From positions 1 through 64,000 of IMG/VR virus record IMGVR_UViG_3300047560_000921: a stretch of 64,000 nucleotides of DNA. The stretch is one strand, 5' to 3'. Positions 8,691 through 61,859 of the stretch are shown here, in pieces. The notes below the pieces were generated by a model. The model ran no database searches. It was given only the letters and a program-made list of their open reading frames with translations, and had not been told where the DNA came from. How positions within the stretch are numbered: position 1 is the stretch's first letter; every line of letters starts with the position of its first letter. The translations under genes and the position numbers were made by a program.

Positions 8691-8698
8691 TATGTAAG

Positions 8699-8704
8699 TA
8701 TTTA
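8699..8704 (-). promoter_or_regulatory. late promoter box TAAATA (terminase)
   Basis: 8 nt upstream of the terminase ATG. Confidence 0.6.
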
Positions 8705-8721
8705 ACCTTTTTCACAGATAA

Positions 8722-8744
8722 GAAAAGGTGCCAAGCACCTTTTC
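8722..8744 (-). terminator. hairpin terminator
   Basis: GAAAAGGTGC-caa-GCACCTTTTC inverted repeat after the 323-aa gene. Confidence 0.6.
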
Positions 8745-8758
8745 CATGTTTTAAAAAA

Positions 8759-9730: not shown

Positions 9731-9731
9731 A

Positions 9732-10331: not shown

Positions 10332-10349
10332 TGCATAATCTCCGATGTA

Positions 10350-10910: not shown

Positions 10911-11350
10911 TTTTTCTTCTGTCCCATTCTGTTGTAAATGTCTTCCTCAGTGACTACCCTGAACACTGCGCCGTGTTTGCGGCACCATGCTTTACAGGCT
11001 TCCCACTTTGCCATATTTAAGACCACTGCCGCCTTTTGTTGTTGACTACGTGCTTCTTCTAATCTAGCTTGGCCGCGTGGCTTAATTTCAATTACTTCTG
11101 TTGTTTTTTGGCCTTGTGGATTTTGATACATGATGACAAAATCTGGAACATAGAATGTTGGTTTGCCAGTAAAAGGATTAATATAAGGTATACGTAAACT
11201 TTCGCTGGCCCAGTTGATAATACCAGGATGGTTATCGCAGAAACGCATAAAAGTTAATTCCCATCCACTGCGATATTTAGGCGTGCTGTTGCCTATGTAT
11301 TTGTCTGGGTTTTGTACTGTGTATCTACCCTGTCTGTAATTTGCTGCCAT
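10907..11350 (-). CDS. gp4: head completion nuclease (T4 gp4/TnsA-like)
   Basis: 'KY.G...YRSGWE..FM..CD....W.SE...IPY...Y.PDF...EIKP...N.AKW'. Confidence 0.88.
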   Translation of the reverse strand: MAANYRQGRYTVQNPDKYIGNSTPKYRSGWELTFMRFCDNHPGIINWASESLRIPYINPFTGKPTFYVPDFVIMYQNPQGQKTTEVIEIKPRGQARLEEARSQQQKAAVVLNMAKWEACKAWCRKHGAVFRVVTEEDIYNRMGQKKK

Positions 11351-11667
11351 TAAACTATTGCACGAGAAATGAACTTATTAGTCTTAGCCAAATTCTCGAC
11401 TCCTAATTTGTTGCCTGCTCCACGCAATAAATTCAACTGGTCTATTAATTGTTGGTCAATGTTTAATCCGTTAGCAGAAATCTTTGCAAGGATAGCATTG
11501 TATGGTTGTTGTGTAATATTTGCAATCAACAATACTTCATAGGCTAGAACACGAGCAATGTTAGGTGTAATACCTTTACGCTCTAAGTTAGCTGTTACAA
11601 TATCGTATGTTTGTTGATTGATAGCATAATTTAAAGGGCTATCACCGGTAATAGTTGACGCTACCAT
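11350..11667 (-). CDS. hypothetical protein in tail operon
   Basis: ORF track; coupled to neighbours. Confidence 0.7.
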   Translation of the reverse strand: MVASTITGDSPLNYAINQQTYDIVTANLERKGITPNIARVLAYEVLLIANITQQPYNAILAKISANGLNIDQQLIDQLNLLRGAGNKLGVENLAKTNKFISRAIV

Positions 11668-11668
11668 A

Positions 11669-13018
11669 TTAACCCAATCTTATAAATTTTTGCAATGAAC
11701 TCATGTTTGCCAAGTTAGTAACAGAGCCAACGTCTACACCGTTAGCGGCTGCTTTGTCTAATGTTGCTTGTTCGTATTGGCTAGCTTGTTGATTAATTTT
11801 ACTGTCAGATGTTTCGCTACCAAATGCTTTACCGCCAAGGCCACTAATAGGAGGTAATTGCTTGGCTAAGGTAACTGCAACGCCTGCGGCTGCAATAGGA
11901 TTCTTTAACAGTCCGCCAACACCTTGTTGTTTAACCATAGATGCTACGCTCAGTGCTGCCGCAATAGTTGTAGGGTTAATAGCTTTGCCTACCCCAATGT
12001 TGCCGCCGCCTAACTTGTCGATGGCCGAACTACCTGCACTAACGATGTTATTCTTTAAGTTGCTAATCTTATCACCAATTTGTTCTGCTAGGTTAGCAGG
12101 AGGTTTGTTACCTGGGCCAGTAATAGCATCACCAGACGCTCCAGTCGTCCAACCTGGTTCTTGTTCGTCCATGCCAGCTTCGCCCTGTGCATCCCAACGT
12201 TCTTCAGGAGGAAAACCTGCAAGTTCGTCACTGCTTGCATTGGGACTGTCGCCACCAAACTCATTGGCTGCACTGTTTGAGTTAGCATACTGTGCTTGAT
12301 CTTCGTGCATAGTAGTTGGACGAAATACTACGCTTTCATACTGAATTGTAATAGTCCATGTTACTGGGCTACCGGTGTCAGTATAATCTAATGTATCGTG
12401 CTGTACTGCGGTAATCTTAGGGTTGATTAATAATGTCTGGTCAACCCAGCCGCCGTACTCCCTATTAACAACCATAGTGATGAAGAAATTGTTATTTGCA
12501 TCATCGACACTAGCATAGCCGTATTCGCCCTTAAACTCCAAACTCAATTGGTCAGGGTTCATGGCATTAAAGCCAGTATCGTTAAAGTTGTTAGGGAAAT
12601 AATATTCCATGTACGCCATTAACAATGCTTGGAATGCATTGTCAATAGTGTCAAAGAATTTAACTTGAACTTGTTGCCACTCTACTTTAGTGTGGACTAA
12701 TCTATGCTTATTGTATTGATTTAAACTTTGTGTACTAACGTTCCATGTTGGCAAGTCTACGCTTTGCGCTCTAAGGGTTAGTTCACTTAATAATTCACTG
12801 ACTTTGTCTGATCCTATTTTATTAGCCAATAGGTCAGTAGCACCTGGACTTAGCTCAAAGCCAACAGTCCAGTTGTGTTTAAGTCTTGGGATCCTACCGA
12901 ATTTGATCCAGTTAGTGCTAGACAGATCTTTATCACGAGATTCCGGGGTTTGGTTATTCCCCGGAACATAGTAACCAAATGCGTAGTGAGGATCTTGTTT
13001 AAGCTCGTAATCAGCCAT
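11669..13018 (-). CDS. tail-tube paralogue / tube initiator-like protein with low-complexity C-terminus
   Basis: 'SVDLP...NQYN...KVEWQQVQVKFFD' and 'HDTLDY....V..TITIQYE' follow the gp19 pattern. Confidence 0.7.
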   Translation of the reverse strand: MADYELKQDPHYAFGYYVPGNNQTPESRDKDLSSTNWIKFGRIPRLKHNWTVGFELSPGATDLLANKIGSDKVSELLSELTLRAQSVDLPTWNVSTQSLNQYNKHRLVHTKVEWQQVQVKFFDTIDNAFQALLMAYMEYYFPNNFNDTGFNAMNPDQLSLEFKGEYGYASVDDANNNFFITMVVNREYGGWVDQTLLINPKITAVQHDTLDYTDTGSPVTWTITIQYESVVFRPTTMHEDQAQYANSNSAANEFGGDSPNASSDELAGFPPEERWDAQGEAGMDEQEPGWTTGASGDAITGPGNKPPANLAEQIGDKISNLKNNIVSAGSSAIDKLGGGNIGVGKAINPTTIAAALSVASMVKQQGVGGLLKNPIAAAGVAVTLAKQLPPISGLGGKAFGSETSDSKINQQASQYEQATLDKAAANGVDVGSVTNLANMSSLQKFIRLG

Positions 13019-13643
13019 TTGTTGCAGACGAACCTGTAGTACGTAGTGATGGGCCTAAACCTAGTTCGCCCAATTGGCCTGGTAGGTTTGGAACAACTGC
13101 GTTACCAATTTGGTAATCAGCCGCATCGTACTGTACAGTCATCTGAATTGTAACGGCGTCGCTTGCGCTATAATCCATGTCGCCGAACTGAACGTCTTGC
13201 AAGAAGCAACCATTCAAGCTCCATGTATCGATAACACCAGTAACATCATCTTGACTTCCATCAAGAGTTTGAATTAGCATACCGAACTTATAGTTAGCGC
13301 CAGCTAATGGACCGCTTTGGTTAGCGTGATCCATTTGACGACCTAGTTGTGCAGAAATCAAACTTGTTACACTGTTGCTTACATCGTCACGAACTGTGAT
13401 GCTAATTGGGCTCCAGCTGTGCTTACCTGCAACATAGATTTTACTGTTGTAAACGTCTAGTTCAACTGCTTGGTGTTGTAGTTGTGGACGACCAACACTT
13501 ACAATTTGACTTGTGAATGTATTTGCGCCTGGCATTAAGCCGTTACCTGCACCAATAAAGACTACACGAAATCTATATTTTAGTTTAGGCATTAGGAGAG
13601 GTGTATCGCCACCTGGAACTCCGAATTTTGATAATTGTGCCAT
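13011..13643 (-). CDS. gp19: tail tube protein
   Basis: 'PKLKYRFRV', 'YVAGKHSWSPISITVRDD', 'W.L.GCF......GDMDY......I.MTVQYD'; directly after the sheath. Confidence 0.88.
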   Translation of the reverse strand: MAQLSKFGVPGGDTPLLMPKLKYRFRVVFIGAGNGLMPGANTFTSQIVSVGRPQLQHQAVELDVYNSKIYVAGKHSWSPISITVRDDVSNSVTSLISAQLGRQMDHANQSGPLAGANYKFGMLIQTLDGSQDDVTGVIDTWSLNGCFLQDVQFGDMDYSASDAVTIQMTVQYDAADYQIGNAVVPNLPGQLGELGLGPSLRTTGSSATNG

Positions 13644-13673
13644 GTTATAATAACTCCTTTACGGACATACATC

Positions 13674-13679
13674 TATTTA
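13674..13679 (-). promoter_or_regulatory. late promoter box TAAATA (tail tube)
   Basis: Upstream of the AAGGAG RBS of the tube gene. Confidence 0.6.
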
Positions 13680-13714
13680 GCCAAAAAGCCAGTAGAAAAT
13701 TAAGTACATATAGA

Positions 13715-13740
13715 AAAAGCCAGGATTTCTCCTGGCTTTT
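13715..13740 (-). terminator. rho-independent terminator after sheath
   Basis: AAAAGCCAGGA-GAAA-TCCTGGCTTTT hairpin ending in a U run. Confidence 0.75.
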
Positions 13741-13780
13741 AATGCCTATTACTAGGCGCTTCCCATCCCACGGGTTGTTT

Positions 13781-16165
13781 TTATTGTAATGCCCCTGTAT
13801 TAACGATACGTACTGGGATATAGATAAATTCAGCGGCCTTTGTTGGCTCGATTGCAATATCAATCCATAGTTCGTTAGCATCAATACGTGATGGTGTATT
13901 GTTTGTAGTATCGCAAACTACTAAGAAGTCATAGATACCACGTTTCTGCATGATGTCTCCTAGGAAACCATCAAACAATGTCTTAACGTTAGCTCTTGTT
14001 GCTGTATCGTTTGGTTCAAAGATGAACGGACGAGCTAGCGGATCAAAACGCTCACGCAAGTAAGCAACTAGACGTGCTACGTTTACACGGTCTAATGCGC
14101 TGGCAATTGGACTCAATGTCTTCTGACCGAATACTACTAAACCAGTACCAGGGAAGTTGACCAATGGGTTCATCTTGTTAGCATATAATGTATCACGTTG
14201 GCCGTTGTTTAGTGCCAATGGCATAAACTCGCCTTCGCCGTTAACATAACCAAAGTTAGAACAGTTAGTTACAACACCACGTGTTAAACCAGCTGGGGCA
14301 AACCATGGGTAGCTGATGCTGTCATTGTAAGCATAGGTACGCAACACTGCATAGCTAGCTGGGGCAACTACGTCATAACCGTTTAAGTCTGTAGTCAATA
14401 CGCTTGGGTAGTACACAGCGGCTTCGCTGGACTTAGTAACAATTCCGTCTTCGCCGTTTGTACCAGCGTTAACACCTGTTACCCACTCAACCCAACCCTG
14501 TGCATCTGGTGCTAAACGTAATGGGCTGTCAACGATAACAAACGCTGTTTCCTTGCGGTCAACGTTTAGAGTTAACATTTCGTCAATTAGTTCAGGATAT
14601 CCAGGAGCCGCAATCAATGTAAATGCCATTGTTTCTTCACGGATTTGTTGATTCTCAGTTACAGCCTTTTGCATTGCACGTACAATAACTTGACGTTGTG
14701 CTTTGCGGCCCATGTAAGGGGCGCCTGCATTTGGGCCAGCACTGATGTTACCGCTGATTGTATGCCATGCACCTTCAGTCGCATTGTACTGCTTAACGTT
14801 GTAAGTAGATACCATGCTGTTCCATAGCAACATACCATCTGGATGTGTTAATGGATCTGGTGTATCTACTTCGCTGTAAGGAGTTGCGCCATAACCGTTG
14901 TATGACTCATCCGCGGCTGTTGCTGTTAAGTCAGCAAATACCACACCCTCGGGAGTTGTTTGGTCAGCATTGTTACGTAGTTGCCATGCGCTACCATCGT
15001 AAACTTTAATTACTGGATAGTTTTCCAAGTCGTTAGTGTCAACCCAAACGTCAGCGATTTGAGCACCTTCTGGCTCTGCTGTATCGATTGTAACACTATT
15101 ACCGTTCTGAACTACGCTTCTCCACAAACCGTTAGACTTAACGTAAATGTCTGCTTGTAGTTCAGTGTTGTACCATAATGTACCGTCTGCTGTTGGGCCA
15201 GTTGGTTCTGTAGCTTTAGCTTCATAAACTAATGTGTCCCATACACCTGCACTGTAACGGCGTAGTTCAAACTGTGCATTGCCTGATGTAGACATTGCAT
15301 AGATACTGCCTGTTACTAAACCTGCGCCAAACGCTGTTTCTGCTTCAGCATCGTTGGCATATACGCTAACTGGCAAGCTGGCAAATTGTCCAGTTGTACT
15401 GCTGTAACGCTTAACTGCTGGCATGAAGCCTTTGTTAGGAGTTGTAGTTTTGAACCATACATCACCGTTGTTGCCTGTGTTTGGAACTTGGTAGTGTGGT
15501 GCTACAGTAACGTTTGTATAGTAACCTGTTGCGGTAGTTAAGCTGCCGCTGTTTACATCAAACCATTGTCCGTTGATTTTCTTGAAATAGTTGTTTGCTG
15601 TTGTGCTTACTACTACTGCGTACTCGCCGTTGGCACCGATGTTGCTCAATGGGAAACCGTTGTTTGTTGTTTCAGTAGTAACTACTGTTACGTCTTGTGC
15701 AATCCACTTACCGTCGATAGCTTCAAAGACGCCCCATACTGTTTCCGCTGTATCTAACCAGTATGTACCGTTAGCAGGTAAACCAGCTGGTTCAATTGCT
15801 GTTGCTTCTAATTGTGCTACGTCTACATCAGCACGTAATACATACGCACGATTTGCTAGGCCTAAGTAGCTGTATGCTGTTAATAAACCGTATTCGTTTA
15901 GTTCGCTTCCGTGTAGCGGTGTACCATTCAAGCTCTTAAATTCAGGAGCTCCGAAAAGTTGTGCTAGTTCACGTTGGCTTGTTAATAGTACCGGTTGTGC
16001 GGCCGCAGACTTAAGAGTCTTTGATGCTAAACCTGTTCCGCCAGGTACTGTCTTATTTTCTGCTGTTGCCAGGATAATAAGTGGCACTGTGCCTTGACCT
16101 GCGCTTGCATACGCACTTTCGTCAATAACACTTACCGCTACGCCTGGAGAAACTAATGTTGCCAT
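13781..16165 (-). CDS. gp18: contractile tail sheath protein
   Basis: Start MATLVSPGVAV (ATG 16165); C-terminal 'PWFAPAG..RG', 'FGQKT', 'RVNVARL', 'FEPND', 'CD.TNNT', 'P.KAAEFI'. Confidence 0.95.
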   Translation of the reverse strand: MATLVSPGVAVSVIDESAYASAGQGTVPLIILATAENKTVPGGTGLASKTLKSAAAQPVLLTSQRELAQLFGAPEFKSLNGTPLHGSELNEYGLLTAYSYLGLANRAYVLRADVDVAQLEATAIEPAGLPANGTYWLDTAETVWGVFEAIDGKWIAQDVTVVTTETTNNGFPLSNIGANGEYAVVVSTTANNYFKKINGQWFDVNSGSLTTATGYYTNVTVAPHYQVPNTGNNGDVWFKTTTPNKGFMPAVKRYSSTTGQFASLPVSVYANDAEAETAFGAGLVTGSIYAMSTSGNAQFELRRYSAGVWDTLVYEAKATEPTGPTADGTLWYNTELQADIYVKSNGLWRSVVQNGNSVTIDTAEPEGAQIADVWVDTNDLENYPVIKVYDGSAWQLRNNADQTTPEGVVFADLTATAADESYNGYGATPYSEVDTPDPLTHPDGMLLWNSMVSTYNVKQYNATEGAWHTISGNISAGPNAGAPYMGRKAQRQVIVRAMQKAVTENQQIREETMAFTLIAAPGYPELIDEMLTLNVDRKETAFVIVDSPLRLAPDAQGWVEWVTGVNAGTNGEDGIVTKSSEAAVYYPSVLTTDLNGYDVVAPASYAVLRTYAYNDSISYPWFAPAGLTRGVVTNCSNFGYVNGEGEFMPLALNNGQRDTLYANKMNPLVNFPGTGLVVFGQKTLSPIASALDRVNVARLVAYLRERFDPLARPFIFEPNDTATRANVKTLFDGFLGDIMQKRGIYDFLVVCDTTNNTPSRIDANELWIDIAIEPTKAAEFIYIPVRIVNTGALQ

Positions 16166-53388: not shown

Positions 53389-53863
53389 TAGCTGTGTAAA
53401 CACAGCTTATTCTTCACTTTACTGCGTAAAGCTCGAATAATTTATTGTTTAATAATTGTTGAATGATTAAGTATTATCCTGAGTTCAGTCACACTTAGCC
53501 TTAAGCAAAGGCCAAGTATTCGAGACATTATCCTTCATCCATATGTCACACTCTAAATAAGCAACTTGTTTTGACCAAGTAAGGGCGGTTCCGCTGTACC
53601 CTTTTACGCTAGACTTAAACGCAACTACACAACACTTTTAGAGCAGTTTGTGTAACCTGTGAGTTGTAATTGTCAACAGAGCTCACTCTTTTCAGCTTTA
53701 CATATACTAAACCCAGTTCTTTTCAAGCAATTGAACTTCGTCCTGTTAAGGATAGTGGTTTTAGTCTCTGCTACGGCGCAGAAGTTCCATCCCTGTGCTC
53801 ACGCTTGGCCAGGTATAGGATCCCTTAATATGCGGCCGGGACTGGGCCTTTCCGTAGTTGTTA
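53389..53863 (-). ncRNA. candidate large structured non-coding RNA (~475 nt), family unrecognised
   Basis: Only long ORF-free gap in the window; at least 9 hairpins, several needing G-U pairs possible only on the minus strand; putative 8-bp pseudoknot. Confidence 0.6.
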
Positions 53864-54292
53864 TTAGAGTTTGTTTATAATGTGGGAGCCATGGACGCGA
53901 ACTTGAATGTGCCCGTTGTAATAATCTGCTGATTCCAGTACTCTGTGAGTAAACTGTTCTCTAGCTTCTATGTACGAGCATTGAGCCTTAGATGTACAGT
54001 AAAATAAGATTTCTCTAGTAAAATTATCTTTACCTAGGGTCTCTACGTCCTTGTTGAGTTCAATGTTTGAGCCAAAATATTCGCGCCAATCAGAATCGAT
54101 TTTGCTACGAATTTTCTTTTTCTTTTTTGTGCCGTTTTTGAGTTTAACTGTTTTGTATGTGGTTTTAGAGAATTTTGCTAATTTCTTGCCGATGTATTTG
54201 CGGCCTGTTGCATTATTTGTGATAATGTAAACAAACCCAATACAATCTTCCGGAAGTGCTTCCACTTCAACTCCCTGATATAGCCAAGTCAT
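53864..54292 (-). CDS. stand-alone GIY-YIG family endonuclease (142 aa)
   Basis: GFVYIIT....RKYIGKK, 'YFGS', conserved E (YIEAREQ) and YYN; Lys-rich insertion; no C-terminal DNA-binding domain. Confidence 0.8.
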   Translation of the reverse strand: MTWLYQGVEVEALPEDCIGFVYIITNNATGRKYIGKKLAKFSKTTYKTVKLKNGTKKKKKIRSKIDSDWREYFGSNIELNKDVETLGKDNFTREILFYCTSKAQCSYIEAREQFTHRVLESADYYNGHIQVRVHGSHIINKL

Positions 54293-54309: not shown

Positions 54310-54948
54310 TCATGCTTGATTTGTATCACTTTCAGGCGAAAAACCTAGCACCATGGGAAGTTTAGATAGTTGTATTCTATTAGAGTTTATAAGTTGAGCC
54401 GTTGCGTCTTGATAATATTGTTCTACTAATTCTATGGTTTCTGCTGTTTGGATTTTGTTATTAAATGTGTATCTTAAGGATTCTAGTTGAAAAACAGATG
54501 TTTCGTATTCTTCTTGTTTAAATTTTAAAAGTTTTTGTGCGCTATCTGCAGAGCAGTTATGTACGTGCTGGAACACATCGACCCACTGATCTATAGATTT
54601 TAAATTATTGTAAAATTGATGATTGCTGTAATTGTATTTTTCAAATTGAAAGTCTACTGCACTGTTTACATAATTGATAGCCAGTGCTTTAGCCCGCATG
54701 AACTGCAACTGCTTGAATTCTGTGGGATTAGTAGTCTTTGCTTTTTTGTATAGTATACGTTTTCCGTTGTCGTAAAACAACTGGTATGTGCAGTAAAGAT
54801 GCCAAACAGACAACTTAGTTTCACCGTTAAACACATTGTAGCTAAGATTGCTTTCAAAGTTAGGAGGCTGATTATCGATGTAATAACTCAGCCAAACTAC
54901 TTGGTCAGTAATTTGATCGACTAACATTTTAAATCGATGAATAGCCAT
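54310..54948 (-). CDS. hypothetical protein (212 aa), last gene of the enzyme cassette
   Basis: ORF track; overlaps the upstream gene. Confidence 0.7.
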   Translation of the reverse strand: MAIHRFKMLVDQITDQVVWLSYYIDNQPPNFESNLSYNVFNGETKLSVWHLYCTYQLFYDNGKRILYKKAKTTNPTEFKQLQFMRAKALAINYVNSAVDFQFEKYNYSNHQFYNNLKSIDQWVDVFQHVHNCSADSAQKLLKFKQEEYETSVFQLESLRYTFNNKIQTAETIELVEQYYQDATAQLINSNRIQLSKLPMVLGFSPESDTNQA

Positions 54949-55999
54949 CTATACTCCTTACATTGGAAAACTTTATTACTCCATCTTCTTCGTAAATTTG
55001 TGTCTTGTATGTTTGTCGCAATGACATGCGTTGACTAAATGCCTTTTGTTTATTCATGTAACTAACATCATTAGTTGCATTAACAATATATCGTTTAGGC
55101 CATAGCTTGTTGTCTATGTAGTTGTGGTATTCTGGATTAGTGCTCATGTACTCAAAACTAAACGTCATTACGTCGTCATCGTAGAAGAAACGGAATATTT
55201 TGTTTTGTGTAGCAATGTCGCTAAGGTCACCGGTCGTACTCCAGTACCATGGACGTATTAAGTCGTCTTGGTGATCCAATGCATTTGCCCACCACCAACT
55301 TAGTTGGTTAATAGACTTAATTTCAAAAGGAGCTTGTCTTGCTAGTTTGATAATTATATCCTGATACAGTGTCGAGTTATCAATCCTAGTAATGTATGGC
55401 AGTAAGTTAATCCACGGATCCATTAAATCTAAGTCGCTGACATTGCCTTTAGAAAATTTTAAAATATCTGTAGACCCTATGACATGGTCGCCCATGTCTC
55501 CCGTTACTAATAATACATTAGGGTCACTCATTAGCTTGGGATAGTTTAATGGAACGATAGGAATGTTTGGTAGTATGTCTCTGTAAAATAGTTCAGGATA
55601 CTCGCCAATACTATATGATGTCATGGCAAGATTAAATTTGCCTGCTTCTAAAAATTCTTTAAATTTAGGATGCTTACGTAATGATACCAATGCACATACG
55701 CTATCGATACCACCACTGTACATTAATGTTATAGTTCTATTGCCCGCAGTGGTATAAATCTTATCAGCAACAGAATCTAGTATACTGTAGTATCTATCTT
55801 CCCAGTCATTGGTTAAGTTCTCTAATTTATACTTGGGGTCTTTAACTATACTGTAGCAAGGAAGTTCGATAGTATCTTTTAATAAGTTAAACCGATCCAC
55901 AGGGAATTCAAAGTTACCCACAACATTACGAAAGCTAGCCCGGTAAGGCAGCTTATCATATGGCATGCTACTCCAATTGACCCACAAGTATTGCTTCAT
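54929..55999 (-). CDS. N-type ATP pyrophosphatase (asparagine-synthetase C-domain-like)
   Basis: PP-loop MYSGGIDS, 'VTGDMGD', no glutaminase domain. Confidence 0.7.
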   Translation of the reverse strand: MKQYLWVNWSSMPYDKLPYRASFRNVVGNFEFPVDRFNLLKDTIELPCYSIVKDPKYKLENLTNDWEDRYYSILDSVADKIYTTAGNRTITLMYSGGIDSVCALVSLRKHPKFKEFLEAGKFNLAMTSYSIGEYPELFYRDILPNIPIVPLNYPKLMSDPNVLLVTGDMGDHVIGSTDILKFSKGNVSDLDLMDPWINLLPYITRIDNSTLYQDIIIKLARQAPFEIKSINQLSWWWANALDHQDDLIRPWYWSTTGDLSDIATQNKIFRFFYDDDVMTFSFEYMSTNPEYHNYIDNKLWPKRYIVNATNDVSYMNKQKAFSQRMSLRQTYKTQIYEEDGVIKFSNVRSIDGYSSI

Positions 56000-57072
56000 G
56001 CATTTGGTCCGCTGAGTTTTCTAGTAGCCACTAAGTTGTGCGTATGCGGCGTAGTAAGGTATGTAATTAAGTCAGCAATAGGAGTTGCGATTACTTGCCC
56101 GCTACTAATACCACCGGCAGCTTCATCGACATACGCTTGATATAGCATTTCTTTGCCTGAGTTAAAGTTTTTTCCTTGTAGCTGTTCAAAGCCTGTGTAT
56201 TTTCTAGCAGGTAACATTTCTGGCCATTCACGCTGAGTCATCAACGGCTTGAACAACATATGGAAACAACGCCACCACATTCTGGGATGTGGTAACCAGC
56301 GTATAAACACTTCGTAGATAACATCTTGTGTGTTTAAAAAGTCTTTTACAGCAGGATCAGTTAAGTATGCAACAATTAGCTCAGGGGTGTAAAGATAAAA
56401 TTTACTAGTACCCTCGTAACCCATGGCCATCATGTGTTGCATAATTGGCAAAGGGGTTTGCCACCAAACTGGCTTTGCAACTCCGGGCACGTTATCTAGT
56501 TCGGGTAAATCTAAATCAGGAGTTAATGTTTTCTTATAAGGTGCAAATACAATGTCTCCGCCTGCCATAATATAACAGTAGTCGGGACAAATAAAATCCA
56601 TAGTAGCACATTGCAACAAAACGTGAACACCAGTGAATCCATACTTTGCCGCGTACTCTTTGCCCTTAGTTGCATAAAATTCATCAGGATTAATTTTAAA
56701 ATCGATGTATTCTATGTTGTACTTTTCGCAAAAAGCATAAGCATTTTTAATGTCATGGTCGTTGAGTATGCGCCCGTCGGCATCAACCATACTAACGATA
56801 ACAGTTTTAAAAGGAATGTCGGCTTGCATAAAACTCAAACATGCCATTTGACTATCACTGCCGCCACTGAGTCCTACACAAATAGGCTTAGTAGCTTTAC
56901 TGGCAATTAGTCTAGCAGTGTTAATACATTCCTGTCTGAATGATTGTATAGGCCTGGTTGTATGGCCTAACTGTATTTGATATTGTTTAGTGGGATCGGG
57001 CTTGTTGTACCACTCGCCGCCAAATCCCCATTTAAAATGGTTGTTTTCTGTGTATTCAAACTTTAAGTCCAT
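55996..57072 (-). CDS. N-type ATP pyrophosphatase (asparagine-synthetase C-domain-like)
   Basis: PP-loop GLSGGSDS, 'MAGGD', 'RKYTGFE'; probable start MDLKFEY at 57072. Confidence 0.7.
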   Translation of the reverse strand: MDLKFEYTENNHFKWGFGGEWYNKPDPTKQYQIQLGHTTRPIQSFRQECINTARLIASKATKPICVGLSGGSDSQMACLSFMQADIPFKTVIVSMVDADGRILNDHDIKNAYAFCEKYNIEYIDFKINPDEFYATKGKEYAAKYGFTGVHVLLQCATMDFICPDYCYIMAGGDIVFAPYKKTLTPDLDLPELDNVPGVAKPVWWQTPLPIMQHMMAMGYEGTSKFYLYTPELIVAYLTDPAVKDFLNTQDVIYEVFIRWLPHPRMWWRCFHMLFKPLMTQREWPEMLPARKYTGFEQLQGKNFNSGKEMLYQAYVDEAAGGISSGQVIATPIADLITYLTTPHTHNLVATRKLSGPNA

Positions 57073-57583
57073 AATGTTCATTCCACCACTGTGTGTTTTT
57101 AAATCCAACGGATCTAATAGGTCTCTTAAACGGCAACTTTAGTTTCCAAATCAAGTAAGAACTAAATGTGTTGCAGTTTGCTTTTAATAAATTAAACTCT
57201 GTAATAGGATAGCTTTTTGTTGCATACAATATGTCACTAAAGTCTACAGCAGGACAGCTATCAATGATTTTTACTTTGTGGCCAAACCAACGAGCATTGT
57301 ATACTCTGTTAGTGATATAAGGAGCACGTTCATAATAGTCCATGGTACCTGCATAGATAGCATTGCATTTTTGCACATCTAGCGTTTCTCGGTCTGTAAC
57401 TTCCGCAACAAACCAAACCCCGCGAGATTTATCATAGCAGGCTATAAACGAATGGGTACCGCCCAGCAACCCTTTAAGGTGCCAGGCAGTAGCGTGTAGA
57501 TAATATGTTTTCTCTGTGTCTAATATTAAATCAAAGTCTTGACTAATATCGCACTGTTTCCAATCTTTAAACAGCATGATCAA
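57056..57583 (-). CDS. permuted papain-like Cys hydrolase (DUF3750/PPPDE-like)
   Basis: N-terminal His 'GGTHSFI', 'RWFG', 'SYP', C-terminal nucleophile motif 'NCNTF'. Confidence 0.6.
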   Translation of the reverse strand: MIMLFKDWKQCDISQDFDLILDTEKTYYLHATAWHLKGLLGGTHSFIACYDKSRGVWFVAEVTDRETLDVQKCNAIYAGTMDYYERAPYITNRVYNARWFGHKVKIIDSCPAVDFSDILYATKSYPITEFNLLKANCNTFSSYLIWKLKLPFKRPIRSVGFKNTQWWNEHYGLKV

Positions 57584-58403
57584 ATTTTGTATAAGGGCTT
57601 GCTGGACTTTGTTCCATTTTGTAGTAGTTATCGTGCTGTCTGTCGTAAGCGGCTTTCCAGTTAACTACGTCGGTGTCCCAATCACCTGTTGGTGCAGGAT
57701 CATGTTGCATATAGTTGTTCTTGTCTTCACCTGCAACCATTACAGTTGATTCTGGTGCAATGTTTAAGATAGGCTTACATTCGGTACTTGCAAGAATCAT
57801 GCCCATAGCAACACGAGGAGTGCTAGCCATATTAGGACCAGAACCGTGAATAATATAAGGGCTGTGTAACAATACACTTCCTGCAGGTACTACAGTTTTA
57901 ACACGCTCCTTAGGTAGATCTTCGTCTACAGTTTGGCCACGCATTAGTAAGTTAGTATCTGTTTTAACGTCTTTGTGCTTACGCTGGAATACGCGATGAC
58001 TACCTTGTACATATTCAATGCTACCGTGTTCTTCTGTAACATCGTCGAAAGCAAACCATGCGGTAACTGCTAGGTGTTTATTATCAAAGTTCCAGTAAGT
58101 AGCGTCTTGATGGAAGCTGACGTCTTTGCCGTCGCCAGGCTTCTTAACCCAAAACAATGTGTCCCAACAATGAATGTTAGGACCGATGAGTTGTGTTAAT
58201 GCTTCTATAAGTTTAGGACTGCGGCTAATTTTATCAACGAACGGAAATAGTACATTACTCTTACAACGATAATCGCTGTTCATAAGATGTAGTTGTTCTT
58301 CGGCTTCTAATACTAGCTTTTTAAGTTCCAGGGCTTCTTCCCTGGACATAATTTCGATGGGCCCAACCCAACCATTGTTTTCAAATTGTTCTTTTAATGT
58401 CAT
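57567..58403 (-). CDS. Fe(II)/2-oxoglutarate dioxygenase, PhyH/EctD family
   Basis: 'FHQDATYW' (HxD), 'GSH', 'HGSGPN....R'. Confidence 0.9.
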   Translation of the reverse strand: MTLKEQFENNGWVGPIEIMSREEALELKKLVLEAEEQLHLMNSDYRCKSNVLFPFVDKISRSPKLIEALTQLIGPNIHCWDTLFWVKKPGDGKDVSFHQDATYWNFDNKHLAVTAWFAFDDVTEEHGSIEYVQGSHRVFQRKHKDVKTDTNLLMRGQTVDEDLPKERVKTVVPAGSVLLHSPYIIHGSGPNMASTPRVAMGMILASTECKPILNIAPESTVMVAGEDKNNYMQHDPAPTGDWDTDVVNWKAAYDRQHDNYYKMEQSPASPYTKFDHAV

Positions 58404-58855
58404 AATGTTTTTTCCATCCTAATAAAATCGGGCTTCATACCAACCGATGCACAACTGGCTTGACGCACTTTGTTGTCTACATGTACATGACTGGCAATAC
58501 GTTTGCTGCCTGCATTGCGTACGATTTGCTCAAAGTGTCTATGCATGATGTTATATAGGCCGCGACGTCGGAACCCGTCTTCTACACAACTGAATACAAT
58601 CCATGCAGTTTTGTAATTGTCTTCTAAAATGTCGTATACAATGTGCCCTGCTACTTGGCCGTTGATTTCTATATAAACAGCTTTGCTTTTGTTAGTGCCA
58701 AACATAAACGGATTTGAATGGCCTGCATCAATTAGCCCGGCATAATTACGCAAGAAAAACGGCATTACTGGACTGCCGCCAATTTGTTGTGCCATTTTAA
58801 TAGTCACATCTTGTCCAGTTTTGTCTTTTTCCGTTGCAATAGTTATGTCTGCCAT
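58400..58855 (-). CDS. GNAT acetyltransferase
   Basis: Motif A 'V...FRRRGLY', 'N' before the last helix, 'GM'; probable ATG 58855 just after the gp46 stop. Confidence 0.82.
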   Translation of the reverse strand: MADITIATEKDKTGQDVTIKMAQQIGGSPVMPFFLRNYAGLIDAGHSNPFMFGTNKSKAVYIEINGQVAGHIVYDILEDNYKTAWIVFSCVEDGFRRRGLYNIMHRHFEQIVRNAGSKRIASHVHVDNKVRQASCASVGMKPDFIRMEKTL

Positions 58856-58856
58856 G

Positions 58857-60632
58857 TTATACCTCAATCATATCTACGTCCAGACCAAATGTAGTAAACC
58901 CATTCTCTTTGGTAACTTGTAGGATTGTATTTACACGACTGACCAGTTCGTCTCTGTGACTGATTAAGAATATGTTTTTGCTTTGTTCACGTGCCATTTT
59001 CTTAAGGATGCCTAACGCACTGTCCACGCCGTTTGGATCCATACCGCTGTCAATCATTTCGTCGATGAACAAAATGTTAATAGGTGTGTTTAGACTTTCA
59101 TAAACATCGCGGAAGCTCCAGCTTAGTCCCAAGATTAAACGATTACGCTCGCCACGTGACAAATTGTCAAAGTCGAACTCTTGGCCCAGCTGACTAATAG
59201 TAACCGACAAGTCACTTTGGAACTTAACTTCATGTGGCAGTGCTAGTTTTTCTAAATAGTATTCTAGCCTATGGTTCAAGTAGCTTAAATTCTGCTCGAT
59301 AATTTTACGGCGAATAAAGCTGTCTTTGTTTGTTAACAGTTTAAGCAAGAACTCTTGGTGTTCAATTAGTCTTGTCAGTTCGTTAACTCTAGTCCAGTCT
59401 AGTTCAGACAATGCTGTTGCCTTAAGGTGATTAATTTGTTCATCGTAAGGATCGGTTTCTAACAGTTTGTTTTCTAACTGATTGTATGTATTGTCTAATG
59501 TAGTTTTGTGATTAATTGCATCGTCCAAACTAGCATACTTTAGAACAGGACATGCACCTAAGTCGCCCAGTGCAAGAATTGCATCGCTGGCTTCTTTTTC
59601 TAATGCTTGCTCTTTAGTTAGGTCTGTTTGGATCAAACTAACTGCTTCTTTAATTTCGTTAAGCATCGACTCTTGCTTTGAATCGTGGATGTCTTGCCCG
59701 CAAGCATGGCACTTGTGATCCTCAGCTTTAACTAATGCGTTGGTCAATTCGGTTAGTTGAATGGTTAAACGTTTTACTGCACTTTGGTGTGTGCTTAGGT
59801 CTTTGTTAAATCGCTTTAATTTGTTTTCTTTTTCGCGCCATGCTGTTACTAATTGGTGATTAGCAAGTTCAGCGTTAATGTCAATGTTTTCTAACTCTTC
59901 GATTACACGTTGCAACATAACAATGTCGTCTTCGTGCTTCTTAAGCCATACGCCACTGCGACGCTCTAAGTCTTCGATTGAAGTCTTAATCTTGTTATTG
60001 CTTTCTTGTTGAGCTTTGATGCGGAACTCTTCTTCTTTCAAAGAATCTCTGCTACCTTTAGTAAGCTCTTTAAGTATGTCAGCCTTTTCACTTAACAGTG
60101 TAATGCCCAACAACTGCTCGATAATGGCACGTTGGTCGTTGCTCTTCATACTCAGGAACGGCTCAGTAAAAGTATTAAGAGCTAGAATATGCTTAAACAT
60201 ATCATAGCTCATACCTAATACTTGTTCGATATGTTCCTGAGTTAGTCTGTTCTCACCCTGTCCCTCGTCGCTAGCGTTACCAGCAATCTCGCTTTCGTTG
60301 ACAATGAATTTGAAAATGTTAGGCTTGCGACCTCTTTCGATTCTGTACGTTGATCCGTTCTTTTCGAAGTCGATAGTAACCAGCATATTTTTGGCATTGG
60401 TTTTGTTAACAAGATTGTCTTTCCTAATGTTAGTAATAGCTTGACCATACAAGCCATAGCACAGTGCATTAACTAAAGTAGTTTTTCCTGTTCCGTTACG
60501 ACTACCGTCGCCGCCAAGGTCCATGTTATTACCTAGCACCAACGTTAGTCCGTGTTGATCCAATTGAACAGCTTGGGTCACATTGCCCACGCTCATAAAG
60601 TTTTTGATTGTTAGATTTTTAACTGTAATCAT
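58857..60632 (-). CDS. gp46: recombination endonuclease ATPase subunit (Rad50/SbcC-like)
   Basis: 'KNFMSVGN', NGTGKT, zinc hook CHAC, LSRGE, FIDE, ISH. Confidence 0.93.
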   Translation of the reverse strand: MITVKNLTIKNFMSVGNVTQAVQLDQHGLTLVLGNNMDLGGDGSRNGTGKTTLVNALCYGLYGQAITNIRKDNLVNKTNAKNMLVTIDFEKNGSTYRIERGRKPNIFKFIVNESEIAGNASDEGQGENRLTQEHIEQVLGMSYDMFKHILALNTFTEPFLSMKSNDQRAIIEQLLGITLLSEKADILKELTKGSRDSLKEEEFRIKAQQESNNKIKTSIEDLERRSGVWLKKHEDDIVMLQRVIEELENIDINAELANHQLVTAWREKENKLKRFNKDLSTHQSAVKRLTIQLTELTNALVKAEDHKCHACGQDIHDSKQESMLNEIKEAVSLIQTDLTKEQALEKEASDAILALGDLGACPVLKYASLDDAINHKTTLDNTYNQLENKLLETDPYDEQINHLKATALSELDWTRVNELTRLIEHQEFLLKLLTNKDSFIRRKIIEQNLSYLNHRLEYYLEKLALPHEVKFQSDLSVTISQLGQEFDFDNLSRGERNRLILGLSWSFRDVYESLNTPINILFIDEMIDSGMDPNGVDSALGILKKMAREQSKNIFLISHRDELVSRVNTILQVTKENGFTTFGLDVDMIEV

Positions 60633-60642
60633 GTCTTATAGT

Positions 60643-61662
60643 TTACTGCAATCCGTTGTAAATGTCAACGAGCAACTGTTTATCAATTACTTTGCTTTCA
60701 ATTGCTGTCAATTGGCCTAGCACAATAGTATCAACACTTTCGAAATGTATATCCCCGCCTTCCCATTCTGTTGCGTGGTCTTCTTTCTTACCTGGAATAA
60801 AACTAATTTCCCTCAGCTTGTATGTGTCCATAAAGTTTTCTTTAAGGAACGTACTTTCTTCGTAGCTAATGTCAACGTCAACAGTTACACGAATGAATGT
60901 GTTGTTGTTAAGATAGTAGTCGGGATTTTCAATTAGCTGTGTTAGTGTAACGTTTCTAAATCTAGGCTGCTGATCCCACGTTATGTATTCAGGCTTGCCG
61001 CCCCATTCCAATAACATCATACCGCGGTCATCGTCGCCAGCATCTGCATAGTTGTGCGGGAACGCATTACCAATGTAATGAATGTTACCGCGACTTTGAC
61101 GTTTGTGGAAATGTCCACTAAACACATATTCTTGATTAGGGAAATGTCCGCTGTTAAGTCCGCCATGATCCGGCATAGCAACCATGGCGTTCATGTAAAA
61201 GTTAGGAAGTTCAAAATGTCCAAACACATAACGTTCTTTCAAGTTACGCATCTTTGTCCATTCATCTTCTACAAGCCAAGGAATGATAGCAACATCACCT
61301 AACTGTAGTACTTCGTCTACCATAATAATGTTGTCAATGTTCTTGGCAAACGGCAAACTGTTAAGCTCTCGCTTTTCCCTATAGTACAAATCGTGGTTAC
61401 CGGTTATAAAGTAAACCTTTTCAAAGTTTTTGCTTAATGTTTCCAGGTTGTTAACAGTATAGTTTAAGGTACTAACGTTAACAGTGGCACGGTGATGATG
61501 CCAGTCACCTAAGAAGATACAAGTTTCTGCACCAGCTGCCTTGGCAGTTTCGCAAAACCAATTGATAAAGTTTTCACAGTCTTGGTTGTGTGCCCTGCTG
61601 TTTTGTCGCATACCAAAGTGTATGTCTGTAAAACACGCTACCTTTTTAAACAGTTGATCCAT
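60643..61662 (-). CDS. gp47: recombination endonuclease nuclease subunit (Mre11/SbcD-like)
   Basis: DIH, GDWHH, GNHD, GHF, GHFH; start MDQLFKK at 61662. Confidence 0.93.
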   Translation of the reverse strand: MDQLFKKVACFTDIHFGMRQNSRAHNQDCENFINWFCETAKAAGAETCIFLGDWHHHRATVNVSTLNYTVNNLETLSKNFEKVYFITGNHDLYYREKRELNSLPFAKNIDNIIMVDEVLQLGDVAIIPWLVEDEWTKMRNLKERYVFGHFELPNFYMNAMVAMPDHGGLNSGHFPNQEYVFSGHFHKRQSRGNIHYIGNAFPHNYADAGDDDRGMMLLEWGGKPEYITWDQQPRFRNVTLTQLIENPDYYLNNNTFIRVTVDVDISYEESTFLKENFMDTYKLREISFIPGKKEDHATEWEGGDIHFESVDTIVLGQLTAIESKVIDKQLLVDIYNGLQ

Positions 61663-61859
61663 TATACTAGTTCCTCTAGAATGCCTAAACATTCGGCAAG
61701 CATTAAGAATCCAGCTGTAACTTTAAGCCAAGAGGTCATTAGTTCTGGATTAGCGCCTGCTAAGAATAGTGTAACGCCTCCTGAAATACGTAGAAAACTT
61801 TTTAACAAACTAACATAAAAATGTCCGCGACTTGTATCTTTAGGTTGTACTTCAATCAT
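61662..61859 (-). CDS. small membrane protein (65 aa)
   Basis: Two hydrophobic segments; coupled at both ends. Confidence 0.65.
   Translation of the reverse strand: MIEVQPKDTSRGHFYVSLLKSFLRISGGVTLFLAGANPELMTSWLKVTAGFLMLAECLGILEELV

What the first reader, a model, noticed from the sequence alone, without database searches (positions are those of the whole stretch)
54310..58855. Six-gene biosynthetic/tailoring cassette inserted after gp46: GNAT, PhyH dioxygenase, papain-like hydrolase, two adenylating enzymes, unknown
Seen: all six ORFs overlap or abut (two ATGA overlaps), forming one coupled unit between gp46 and the GIY-YIG gene. Motifs: RRRG (GNAT), HQD...H...R (Fe/2OG), His...NCNTF (permuted papain-like), and two divergent SGGxDS PP-loop proteins without glutaminase domains. 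Established: a glutaminase-less asparagine-synthetase homologue plus a Cys peptidase is the core logic of lasso-peptide maturation, and PP-loop enzymes also modify tRNA and nucleobases. Inference: a phage-encoded pathway that makes amide/isopeptide bonds and hydroxylates/acetylates a peptide, virion protein, small molecule or nucleic acid, possibly the neighbouring RNA. No precursor peptide or RRE was identifiable in this window, so the substrate is unknown.
Basis: partly seen in the sequence, partly recalled or inferred. Interest (0 to 1): 0.75.

Follow-up and report, generated by a model that had tools for sequence, protein, structure and literature searches.

The report
Phage amide-synthetase tailoring gene cassette
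An uncultivated large phage carries a conserved six-gene cassette built from two modules, each centred on a glutaminase-less asparagine-synthetase-like enzyme; these modules are common in environmental phages, almost absent from cultured ones, and their substrate is still unknown, with a virion tail protein as my best guess.

Summary
Six tightly coupled minus-strand genes (54310-58867) follow gp46: GNAT, PhyH dioxygenase, a permuted papain-like Cys hydrolase, two PP-loop enzymes and a 212-aa unknown. AlphaFold models (pLDDT 93-95) show that both PP-loop proteins are stand-alone asparagine-synthetase-type synthetase domains. Their nearest solved folds are beta-lactam synthetase, AsnB/ASNS and carbapenam synthetase (Z 12-14).

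The cassette is syntenic in six related phage contigs. Across 124 non-redundant phage loci it resolves into two modules.
- PhyH, the Cys hydrolase and PP1 recur in 16 loci, and the hydrolase gene always overlaps the PP1 start.
- PP2 sits next to a helical partner, the superfamily of the 212-aa protein: 50 of 52 partner genes adjoin a PP2 gene.

The partner has no invariant residue. By protein-language-model features it resembles the helical domain of tail-fibre assembly proteins. Several PP2 modules lie beside tail-fibre genes.

The lasso-peptide reading fails its tests: no RRE, no transglutaminase protease, no precursor gene, no N-terminal cyclase domain. A tRNA link is weak and inconsistent.

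Best guess, at moderate-to-low confidence: ATP-dependent amide or isopeptide chemistry on a virion tail protein, with hydroxylation and acetylation. A small-molecule or lipid substrate remains a serious rival. These are new, phage-specific variants of a known enzyme class.

The parts
58400..58867 (-). GNAT N-acetyltransferase (151-155 aa; probable ATG at 58855, one base after the gp46 stop)
   Evidence: Pfam Acetyltransf_1 2.4e-8, above its cut-off; weak RimI-like NCBIfam hit. GNAT genes lie within 3 kb of PP1/PP2 genes in 16 of 18 loci that have one.
57567..58403 (-). PhyH-family Fe(II)/2-oxoglutarate dioxygenase (278 aa); first gene of the PhyH-C97-PP1 module
   Evidence: Pfam PhyH 3.7e-24. 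HQD...H...R is present. It is the most conserved cassette gene, 79-91% identical in relatives. It sits upstream of C97-PP1 in distant loci L017, L018, L026, L165.
57056..57583 (-). Permuted papain-like Cys hydrolase or transferase (PPPDE/DUF3750-like, 173 aa from the ATG at 57577)
   Evidence: Invariant H42, Q69, C135 (NCNTF), E59 and E64 in 15 homologues. Pfam Peptidase_C97 is below cut-off. Two relatives carry DUF3750. Atlas feature hits of 0.90-0.94 go to IcsB_M, DUF3750, TseH, C97, CLN5 and Lnb_N. In 16 loci its 3' end overlaps the PP1 start. It evolves fast.
55996..57108 (-). PP1: stand-alone asparagine-synthetase-type synthetase domain (361 aa from the ATG at 57081), PP-loop SGGSDS
   Evidence: AF2 pLDDT 94.6. 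VIA-align Z 14.1-12.4 to beta-lactam synthetase, AsnB, ASNS and carbapenam synthetase, against at most 11 for LarE and NadE. Atlas TM 0.73-0.75 to phage-only clusters and 0.62-0.64 to Asn_synthase clusters. Nineteen invariant residues in 41 homologues.
54929..55999 (-). PP2: second, very divergent stand-alone asparagine-synthetase-type synthetase domain (356 aa), PP-loop SGGIDS
   Evidence: AF2 pLDDT 93.0. VIA-align Z 12.8-9.9 to the same AsnB-class set, with the next fold at 8.7. Atlas and AFDB TM up to 0.77. The family motif VTGExGDQxFGS is present. Profile similarity to PP1 is limited to the PP-loop.
54310..54948 (-). unk212: non-enzymatic helical partner of PP2 (212 aa), possibly like the helical domain of tail-fibre assembly proteins
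   Evidence: hhalign gives 97% probability to partner family f4 and 80% to f26. Fifty of 52 partner genes adjoin a PP2 gene. No invariant column in 49 sequences. Atlas leads point to HI1402_helical, DUF4376 and Caudo_TAP. It evolves fast.
53864..54292 (-). SegE-like GIY-YIG protein (142 aa), syntenic with the cassette; whether it belongs functionally is unknown
   Evidence: Pfam SegE_GIY-YIG 6.5e-33. It is 84-96% identical at the same position in relatives, and a 42% homologue follows the partner gene in L006. A SegE-like gene also follows PP2 in L120, L131 and L150.
53706..53847 (-). Polynucleobacter-1 RNA at the 3' end of the transcription unit (context, not shown to be part of the system)
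   Evidence: Rfam RF01718, 91.6 bits. It holds the same position in L001, L002, L003, L005 and L009.

Best explanation
The cassette joins two conserved phage modules, each built on an ATP-dependent, carboxylate-adenylating amide synthetase of the asparagine-synthetase (AsnB) class that has no glutaminase domain.

Module 1 is PhyH, the Cys hydrolase and PP1. The Fe/2OG dioxygenase hydroxylates the substrate. The translationally coupled papain-like Cys enzyme does one of two things: it trims or de-acylates the substrate to expose a reactive group, or it supplies ammonia as an amidohydrolase subunit. PP1 then adenylates a carboxylate and closes an amide bond.

Module 2 is PP2 and unk212. The fast-evolving, residue-unconstrained helical partner works as a specificity adaptor that brings a target to PP2. 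The GNAT adds an acetyl group.

The most likely target is a phage protein, in particular a tail-fibre or baseplate protein. Its Asp, Glu or C-terminal carboxylates would be amidated or cross-linked as isopeptides, and it would also be hydroxylated and acetylated.

Shown here: the enzyme classes, the intact catalytic motifs, the module architecture and the co-occurrence. Inferred: the chemistry beyond adenylation, the adaptor role of the partner, and the protein (tail) substrate.
For: - Fold class of PP1 and PP2.
- Conserved PP-loop and AsnB-like acidic motif.
- Conserved His/Cys/Gln in the hydrolase and its constant overlap with the PP1 start in 16 loci.
- Partner-PP2 adjacency (50 of 52) and no invariant partner residue.
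- The own genome holds three partner-PP2 pairs, one from each partner subfamily, as expected of specificity adaptors.
- The partner and the Cys hydrolase are the fastest-evolving genes, between conserved enzymes.
- A partner family member scores 0.91 with 174-176 shared features to HI1402_helical clusters, and also hits Caudo_TAP, Caudo_TAP_N, XkdW and YomQ_N. unk212 itself gives weaker versions of the same leads, by features and by structure.
- PP2 or PP1 modules lie directly beside PHROG-confirmed tail-fibre or baseplate genes in L103, L125, L128, L017, the cultured phage Cygsa01 and two paralogous modules of the own genome. The cassette itself lies about 0.7 kb from baseplate-hub and tape-measure-like genes.
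- Frequent neighbours are protein-hydroxylase-type oxygenases (Asp/Asn beta-hydroxylase, P4H-type 2OG-FeII_Oxy_3, cupin) and radical SAM enzymes.
Against: - No substrate was identified, and no modified virion protein is known.
- The tail-fibre adjacency was never tested against a background, and tail genes are abundant in large phages.
- The link from partner to tail-fibre assembly proteins rests on language-model features and TM scores near 0.5. PF27318 is not in the local Pfam copy, and DUF4376 gives no hit.
- In the window, the cassette is co-oriented with the early/middle-type genes gp46 and gp47, not with late structural genes.
- The commonest neighbour of the wider PP1 family is a membrane fatty-acid-desaturase-like enzyme. 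TctC and DctP solute-binding-protein homologues sit directly upstream of some PP genes. Both point to lipids or small carboxylates.
Confidence: 0.38

Rival explanations
1. This is a small-molecule or lipid tailoring pathway, an auxiliary metabolic cassette. PP1 and PP2 amidate or ligate a free carboxylate such as an amino-acid derivative, organic acid or acyl chain. PhyH hydroxylates it, as ectoine or phytanoyl-CoA hydroxylases do. The GNAT N-acylates it, and the papain-like enzyme acts as an acyl-transferase or thioesterase.
For: - The nearest solved folds are small-molecule enzymes: beta-lactam synthetase, carbapenam synthetase, AsnB and TsnB9.
- FA_desaturase-like genes lie within 3 kb of PP genes in 33 loci.
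- TctC and DctP solute-binding homologues, TauD and Rieske oxygenases are recurrent direct neighbours.
- The feature-relatives of the Cys hydrolase include the lipid acyl-transferases and thioesterases IcsB and CLN5.
- The PhyH protein has weak ectoine-hydroxylase and halogenase-family hits.
Against: - The partner protein has no conserved residues and resembles a tail-fibre assembly domain.
- Three partner-PP2 pairs in one genome fit macromolecular specificity better than metabolite specificity.
- The window cassette itself has no desaturase or solute-binding-protein gene.
- Several modules sit inside tail-fibre gene runs.
Confidence: 0.27
2. The cassette modifies nucleic acid, either tRNA or phage DNA or the adjacent structured RNA. 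The PP-loop enzymes would adenylate a base carbonyl or carboxyl, as TilS, QueC or GMP synthetase do, and the oxygenase and GNAT would decorate it further.
For: - Twenty-eight of 124 loci have tRNAs within 10 kb, and the cluster is embedded in or abuts large tRNA arrays in L018, L007/L025, L087, L144 and L148.
- The cassette follows ThyX and ribonucleotide reductase genes in L006.
- Weak sequence hits of PP1 go to the PP-loops of NcsA, TilS and MnmA.
- A conserved RNA lies at the 3' end in close relatives.
Against: - By fold, both proteins group with the AsnB class and not with tRNA- or base-modifying PP-loop enzymes.
- In the complete relative that shares the PP1-PP2-partner core, the tRNA array is 22 kb away. 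In another contig it is 85 kb away, and two others have none.
- No tRNA occurs in the own 231-kb record, although that record is only 65% complete.
- PP1, PP2 and the partner are mildly acidic, with median pI about 6.
- The RNA does not travel with the modules outside the closest relatives.
Confidence: 0.13
3. One reading: lasso-like or other RiPP maturation. The Cys peptidase removes a leader, an AsnB-like cyclase forms a macrolactam, and PhyH and the GNAT tailor the peptide. The precursor would be encoded elsewhere.
For: - AsnB-like enzymes and a Cys hydrolase are adjacent and translationally coupled.
- Radical SAM enzymes, including B12-dependent ones, and small ORFs of about 100-115 aa recur near PP2 genes in other phages.
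Against: - There is no PqqD/RRE and no Transglut_core3 protease in the record.
- PP1 and PP2 (about 360 aa) lack the N-terminal domain that lasso cyclases share with AsnB. This comparison rests on established knowledge of the family.
- The hydrolase is of the permuted PPPDE type, not the B2 type.
- No intergenic space or small ORF exists inside the cassette.
- NCBIfam gave no lasso-cyclase hit.
Confidence: 0.08

Closest known systems
Asparagine synthetase B-class synthetase domains (AsnB/ASNS, beta-lactam synthetase, carbapenam synthetase, TsnB9)
   Same: They share the PP-loop SGGxDS, the overall fold of the C-terminal synthetase domain (Z 12-14) and, in the PP2 family, the acidic GExGxD-type motif. 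The implied chemistry is carboxylate adenylation followed by attack of an amine or ammonia.
   Different: PP1 and PP2 have no N-terminal Ntn glutaminase domain at all. The window proteins are below Pfam PF00733 detection. Sequence identity is 8-14%. They form phage-restricted families and have different gene partners.
Lasso-peptide maturation (B1 RRE, B2 protease, C cyclase)
   Same: An AsnB-like enzyme sits next to a papain-superfamily Cys enzyme. PhyH-like and GNAT tailoring enzymes occur in some lasso clusters; this last point is from established knowledge and was not tested here.
   Different: There is no RRE, no transglutaminase-type protease, no precursor gene and no cyclase N-terminal domain.
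PPPDE/DeSI (Peptidase_C97) and DUF3750 permuted papain-like enzymes
   Same: The His-before-Cys order, the NCNxF Cys motif and a conserved Gln are shared. There is a sub-threshold Pfam C97 hit, and two relatives carry DUF3750.
   Different: The score is below the Pfam gathering threshold. This is a small phage-only family (36 clusters), always coupled to PP1. Its substrate is unknown.
Phage tail-fibre assembly proteins (Caudo_TAP with HI1402_helical or DUF4376 domains)
   Same: The partner family resembles their helical domain by language-model features (0.91, 174-176 shared) and by weak structural matches (TM about 0.5). Some partner-PP2 pairs lie next to tail-fibre genes.
   Different: No HMM-level match was found, and no Caudo_TAP domain proper. 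The partner is always paired with an AsnB-like enzyme, which is not known for tail-fibre assembly proteins.
Pseudomonas phage Cygsa01 'MnmA' genes (PP179332, Cygsa01_00008 and _00010)
   Same: This is the only cultured-phage relative of the PP2 family found: 24% identity, E 8e-9, with both genes confirmed by HMM. The genes lie right after the long-tail-fibre distal subunit.
   Different: It has two PP2-like genes with a 90-aa ORF between them. It has no PhyH, C97, GNAT or detectable partner. The MnmA annotation is probably wrong.

Membership tests
Asparagine synthetase class (Asn_synthase, PF00733) synthetase domain | PP-loop SGGxDS ATP-pyrophosphatase motif | tested here: met
   SGGSDS in PP1 and SGGIDS in PP2. 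The motif is invariant in 41 and 61 homologues.
Asparagine synthetase class (Asn_synthase, PF00733) synthetase domain | Fold of the AsnB C-terminal domain, closer than to other PP-loop folds | tested here: met
   PP1 scores Z 14.1-12.4 to the AsnB-class set (TsnB9 11.3) against at most 11.1 for LarE and NadE. PP2 scores Z 12.8-9.9 against at most 8.7. Atlas TM is about 0.62 to PF00733 clusters.
Asparagine synthetase class (Asn_synthase, PF00733) synthetase domain | Sequence match to PF00733 above the curated cut-off | tested here: not met
   PP1 and PP2 give no PF00733 hit. Seven of 61 PP2 relatives hit it weakly, best 1.5e-4. The own-genome paralogues score 12-16 bits against a cut-off of 21.
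Asparagine synthetase class (Asn_synthase, PF00733) synthetase domain | N-terminal Ntn glutaminase domain (glutamine-dependent AsnB) | tested here: not met
   The proteins are 356-361 aa, and no GATase Pfam hit was found. The models consist of the synthetase domain plus short N-terminal strands.
Lasso-peptide biosynthetic cluster | PqqD-like RRE (B1) | tested here: not met
   PF05402 has no match in the 231-kb record, while the same search rings in 6 of the 14 control genomes. None was found in the cassette proteins.
Lasso-peptide biosynthetic cluster | Transglutaminase-like leader peptidase (B2) | tested here: not met
   PF13471 has no match in the record. The Cys enzyme present is of the permuted His...Cys type.
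Lasso-peptide biosynthetic cluster | Short precursor gene in or next to the cluster | tested here: inconclusive
   The cassette genes overlap or abut, so none fits inside. The record is only 65% complete, and no genome-wide precursor search was made.
Peptidase_C97 / PPPDE | Permuted catalytic His...Cys with an NCNxF-type Cys motif | tested here: met
   H42 and C135 (NCNTF) are invariant in 15 sequences.
Peptidase_C97 / PPPDE | Pfam PF05903 score above the gathering threshold | tested here: not met
   The score is 18.3 bits against 29.2, and it covers only the Cys-motif region.
PhyH Fe(II)/2OG dioxygenases | PF05721 above cut-off, plus the HxD...H metal triad and a 2OG-binding Arg | tested here: met
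   The score is 86.6 bits against 22. HQD, a later His and an Arg are present in the sequence. The structure was not modelled.
GNAT acetyltransferases | PF00583 above cut-off and an acetyl-CoA-binding R/Q-x-x-G-x-G/A-like motif | tested here: met
   The score is 34.7 bits against 20.7. RRRGLY is present, though its last position is not G or A.
tRNA- or base-modifying PP-loop enzymes (TilS, MnmA, TtcA/NcsA, QueC) | Family HMM at cut-off, or nearest fold | tested here: not met
   All hits are far below cut-off and limited to the PP-loop. By fold they rank below the AsnB class.
Tail-fibre assembly proteins (HI1402_helical / DUF4376 / Caudo_TAP), for unk212 | Profile match to the family domains | tested here: inconclusive
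   PF27318 is not in the local library. DUF4376 gives no hit in the record. No Pfam hit was found among 49 partner sequences. Only the Atlas feature and structure leads exist.

The most novel reading that the evidence does not exclude
Environmental phages carry a previously unrecognised ATP-dependent post-translational modification system for their own tail fibres or other virion proteins. Glutaminase-less AsnB-like ligases would be aimed at their targets by fast-evolving adaptors that resemble tail-fibre assembly proteins. A second branch would pair an AsnB-like ligase with a papain-fold partner, which may be a new kind of ammonia-donating subunit. Together with oxygenases and an acetyltransferase, the system would install amide or isopeptide, hydroxyl and acetyl marks that alter fibre stability or receptor specificity.
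Probability: 0.2. Interest if true: 0.85.

Novelty: new variant of a known kind. Interest (0 to 1): 0.62.

Why it matters
These AsnB-like families are large in uncultivated phages. Atlas clusters hold up to 800 members that are 78-100% viral. About 205 representative clusters at 50% identity match PP2, and 364 IMG/VR stretches were confirmed in one scan. Yet among 50,697 deposited phage records they appear in only one cultured phage, and among 185,579 species genomes in one contig of a metagenome-assembled genome. No paper found in the library addresses their function.

The finding gives a defined, testable architecture: two modules with intact catalytic residues and a likely adaptor. It applies to a recurrent block of 'hypothetical' genes that sits among the many oxygenase genes of aquatic phages, whose roles are unexplained. 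If the substrate is a tail protein, this would be a new enzymatic route for phages to tune adsorption organelles. If it is a metabolite or lipid, it is a new auxiliary pathway.

Tried and rejected
- Megablast and tblastn of the region, PP1, PP2 and two own-genome paralogues against 50,697 phage records found nothing. Only a distant PP2 relative found Cygsa01.
- PHROGs has no family for PhyH, C97, PP1 or PP2. NCBIfam gave only sub-threshold hits.
- PDB sequence-profile searches recognised only the PP-loop in PP1 and PP2 and gave nothing significant for the partner or C97.
- Lasso reading: rejected.
- tRNA link: 28 of 124 loci have tRNAs within 10 kb, but whole-contig checks were mixed, at 3.7 kb, 22 kb, 85 kb and none in two contigs. 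I left it as a weak rival.
- T4 late-promoter timing: TATAAATA is not used, with 2 copies against 5.35 expected. Sigma-70-like and terminator scans are at background. Expression timing could therefore not be inferred.
- Literature searches for phage AsnB-like proteins gave only bare annotations, for example PaBG gene 180 and Dickeya and Erwinia jumbo phages.
The PP1 alignment found one real relative, a Herminiimonas MAG contig carrying the same gene set.
- The structure-prediction cap (2 jobs) prevented models of C97, the partner, PhyH, the GNAT or any complex.
- dN/dS is mostly saturated.

Full report
**What is there.**
The window is the first 64 kb of a 231,384-bp linear IMG/VR virus record (41% GC, CheckV completeness 65%). 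By gp46, its nearest cultured relatives are the PA5oct-like Pseudomonas jumbo phages, at only 50% identity. On the minus strand, gp47 (60643-61692) and gp46 (58857-60632) are followed without gaps by six ORFs. Junctions read from the sequence confirm the coupling. Two are ATGA overlaps (GNAT/PhyH and PP1/PP2), three are overlaps of 11-26 nt, and a single base separates the gp46 stop from the GNAT ATG. A SegE-like GIY-YIG gene follows after 17 nt (PF19835, 6.5e-33). Next comes a Polynucleobacter-1 RNA (RF01718, 91.6 bits). A hairpin at 53390-53407 can be read as a terminator on either strand. Base composition across the cassette is unremarkable.

**Domain calls.**
The GNAT (PF00583, 2.4e-8) and PhyH (PF05721, 3.7e-24) pass Pfam's cut-offs. 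The third protein hits Peptidase_C97 only below cut-off. PP1 has sub-threshold PP-loop hits to NAD_synthase, ATP_bind_3 and tRNA_Me_trans. PP2 and unk212 hit nothing meaningful.

**Fold of the two PP-loop proteins.**
AlphaFold models built on family alignments are confident: PP1 pLDDT 94.6 and PP2 pLDDT 93.0.
- Foldseek and VIA-align put both closest to the asparagine-synthetase class. For PP1, beta-lactam synthetase, E. coli AsnB, human ASNS and carbapenam synthetase score Z 14.1-12.4 and TsnB9 11.3. For PP2 the same set scores Z 12.8-9.9.
- Other PP-loop folds rank lower: LarE, NadE, NcsA and TilS at 11 or less for PP1, and 8.7 or less for PP2.
- In the ESM Atlas, both match phage-only clusters at TM 0.72-0.77 and Asn_synthase clusters at about 0.62. 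BFVD hits are 'uncultured Caudovirales phage' proteins, some already named asparagine synthase.
- Neither protein has a glutaminase domain.
- PP1 has 19 invariant residues, including the PP-loop. The PP2 family keeps SGGIDS and a motif, VTGExGDQxFGS, that resembles AsnB's acidic loop from my own knowledge of AsnB. The window's PP2 reads TGDMGDH there.
- The two families are recognisably related only in the PP-loop.

**The Cys enzyme.**
Fifteen homologues share invariant H42, Q69 and C135 (NCNTF), plus E59, E64 and R91. This is the permuted His-then-Cys arrangement of PPPDE-type papain-fold enzymes. Two of 36 database relatives carry DUF3750. Atlas feature neighbours are IcsB_M, DUF3750, TseH, Peptidase_C97, CLN5 and Lnb_N. 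From my own knowledge, that set mixes hydrolases with acyl-transferases.

**Conservation and module structure.**
The full order gp46-GNAT-PhyH-C97-PP1-PP2-unk212-SegE recurs in related IMG/VR contigs. I collected 124 non-redundant phage loci holding PP1 or PP2 relatives. In these the cassette splits in two.
- Module 1: C97-like genes occur in 16 loci. In every one they lie immediately upstream of a PP1 gene and overlap its start, usually after a PhyH gene. A Herminiimonas MAG contig, the only real PP1 relative among 185,579 species genomes, carries cupin, PP2-like, PP1, PhyH and C97 genes.
- Module 2: unk212 is homologous to two larger de novo families, f4 (hhalign 97%) and f26 (80%; f4 to f26 is 97%). 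Of 52 partner genes, 50 adjoin a PP2 gene, and 51 of 93 PP2 genes have a partner.
- L006 keeps GNAT-PP1-PP2-partner-SegE without PhyH and C97. L007 carries both modules plus extra PP1 copies.
- The own genome holds four PP2-type and two PP1-type genes. Three partner-PP2 pairs are present, one from each partner subfamily.
- Recurrent neighbours across the loci are FA_desaturase-like membrane proteins, Asp/Asn beta-hydroxylases, cupins, 2OG-FeII_Oxy_3, Rieske and radical SAM enzymes, TctC and DctP homologues and ThyX.
- All cassette genes show dN far below dS wherever dS is not saturated. C97 and the partner evolve fastest, at 48% and 50% identity to L002, where PhyH is 85% and PP1 76%.

**What the partner might be.**
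An alignment of 49 partner sequences has no invariant column and 19% mean identity, so it is unlikely to be an enzyme. No Pfam or PDB profile hit is significant. The Atlas gives consistent leads. For unk212, feature and structure hits go to DUF4376, HI1402_helical and Caudo_TAP proteins, with scores of 0.78-0.83 and TM of 0.42-0.51. For an f4 member about 15% identical to unk212, HI1402_helical clusters score 0.91 with 174-176 shared features. Caudo_TAP_N, Caudo_TAP, XkdW and YomQ_N appear further down. These are domains of tail-fibre assembly proteins. PF27318 is not in the local Pfam copy, so no HMM test was possible.

**Genomic company of tail genes.**
PHROGs confirm tail-fibre or baseplate genes directly beside PP modules in several places:
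- L103: a long-tail-fibre distal subunit
- L125 and L128: a tail-fibre-assembly-like protein and fibre proteins
- L017: a baseplate wedge-fibre connector right after PhyH-C97
- Cygsa01: two PP2-like genes after the distal fibre subunit

In the own genome, one PP2 paralogue lies downstream of tail-fibre and minor-tail genes. Another partner-PP2 pair is about 3 kb from a fibre-like gene. The cassette itself is about 0.7 kb from baseplate-hub and tape-measure-like genes. This is suggestive but was not compared with a background.

**Alternatives.**
- Lasso-type RiPP logic fails on every testable defining feature.
- A nucleic-acid substrate is suggested by tRNA arrays near 28 of 124 loci, sometimes enclosing the cluster. 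Whole-contig checks are inconsistent, the fold class argues against it, and the proteins are mildly acidic.
- A small-molecule or lipid substrate is a serious rival. It rests on the desaturase-like, TauD, Rieske and solute-binding-protein neighbours, and on the small-molecule chemistry of the nearest solved folds.

**Conclusion.**
The cassette is best described as two conserved, phage-specific modules built on glutaminase-less AsnB-class amide synthetases, plus a GNAT. The substrate is not established. I favour a virion tail protein (confidence about 0.38), ahead of a metabolite or lipid (about 0.27), nucleic acid (about 0.13) and a RiPP (about 0.08).

Noticed in passing
window 53706-53847 (-); L001 6614-6755, L002 11250-11390, L003 6843-6981, L005 11290-11428, L009 2199-2339: A full-length Polynucleobacter-1 RNA (RF01718, 81-92 bits) sits right after the SegE-like gene in the window and in five close relatives, at the 3' end of the operon. 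That position is not the 5' UTR expected of a cis-regulator. Weinberg et al. 2010 (PMC2864571) list the motif for Burkholderiales and fresh water or estuary, which hints at the phage's host and habitat. It is absent from L006.
   Followed up: partly
G000:C1:99759-109116 (L014): A second, larger tailoring operon lies in the same genome. It holds f3, f17, an f5 (possibly GNAT-like) gene, a PP2 paralogue, an f4 partner, a B12-binding radical SAM enzyme, an FA_desaturase-like gene, another f5 gene, a PP1 paralogue, TauD and two Asp/Asn beta-hydroxylase-like genes. In L007 this set and the cassette are contiguous.
   Followed up: partly
G000:C1:170149-174256 (L015) and C1:186354-191762 (L016): Two further PP2 paralogues exist. 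One follows a methyltransferase, an alpha/beta hydrolase and an f26 partner. The other ends a minus-strand run that starts with tail-fibre and minor-tail genes.
   Followed up: partly
window 53864-54292 (-): The SegE-like GIY-YIG protein is only 142 aa, the nuclease domain alone. It is 84-96% identical and syntenic in relatives, which is unlike a freely mobile homing endonuclease. Its best PHROG (phrog_447) is labelled 'NAD synthetase', probably a mislabel. SegE-like genes also follow PP2 genes in L120, L131 and L150.
   Followed up: partly
whole record G000:C1: ARAGORN finds no tRNA gene in 231 kb, whereas relatives such as the L006 and L007 contigs carry arrays of 27-37 tRNAs. The record is only 65% complete, so the array may lie in the missing part.
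   Followed up: partly
L018 10248-10612: A tmRNA (alpha_tmRNA or permuted tmRNA models, 77-100 bits) lies inside a phage tRNA array that also encloses a PP2-cupin-PhyH-C97-PP1 cluster and a ClpP-like gene.
   Followed up: no
window, whole: The T4 late-promoter consensus TATAAATA occurs only twice in 64 kb, against 5.35 expected. This T4-like-looking phage probably uses a different late promoter.
   Followed up: no
L164 (Pseudomonas phage Cygsa01, PP179332) 7715-9864 and 9967-14787: The two genes annotated 'tRNA-specific 2-thiouridylase MnmA' are PP2-family AsnB-like proteins. On the opposite strand, a 1606-aa ORF has no CDS in the record's feature table, which lists only a tRNA-Ala there.
   Followed up: no
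G000:C1:73404-73493 (+), 221-aa open frame: Another weak PP-loop/Asn_synthase-like match (12.9 bits) lies just outside the window. It was not examined.
   Followed up: no
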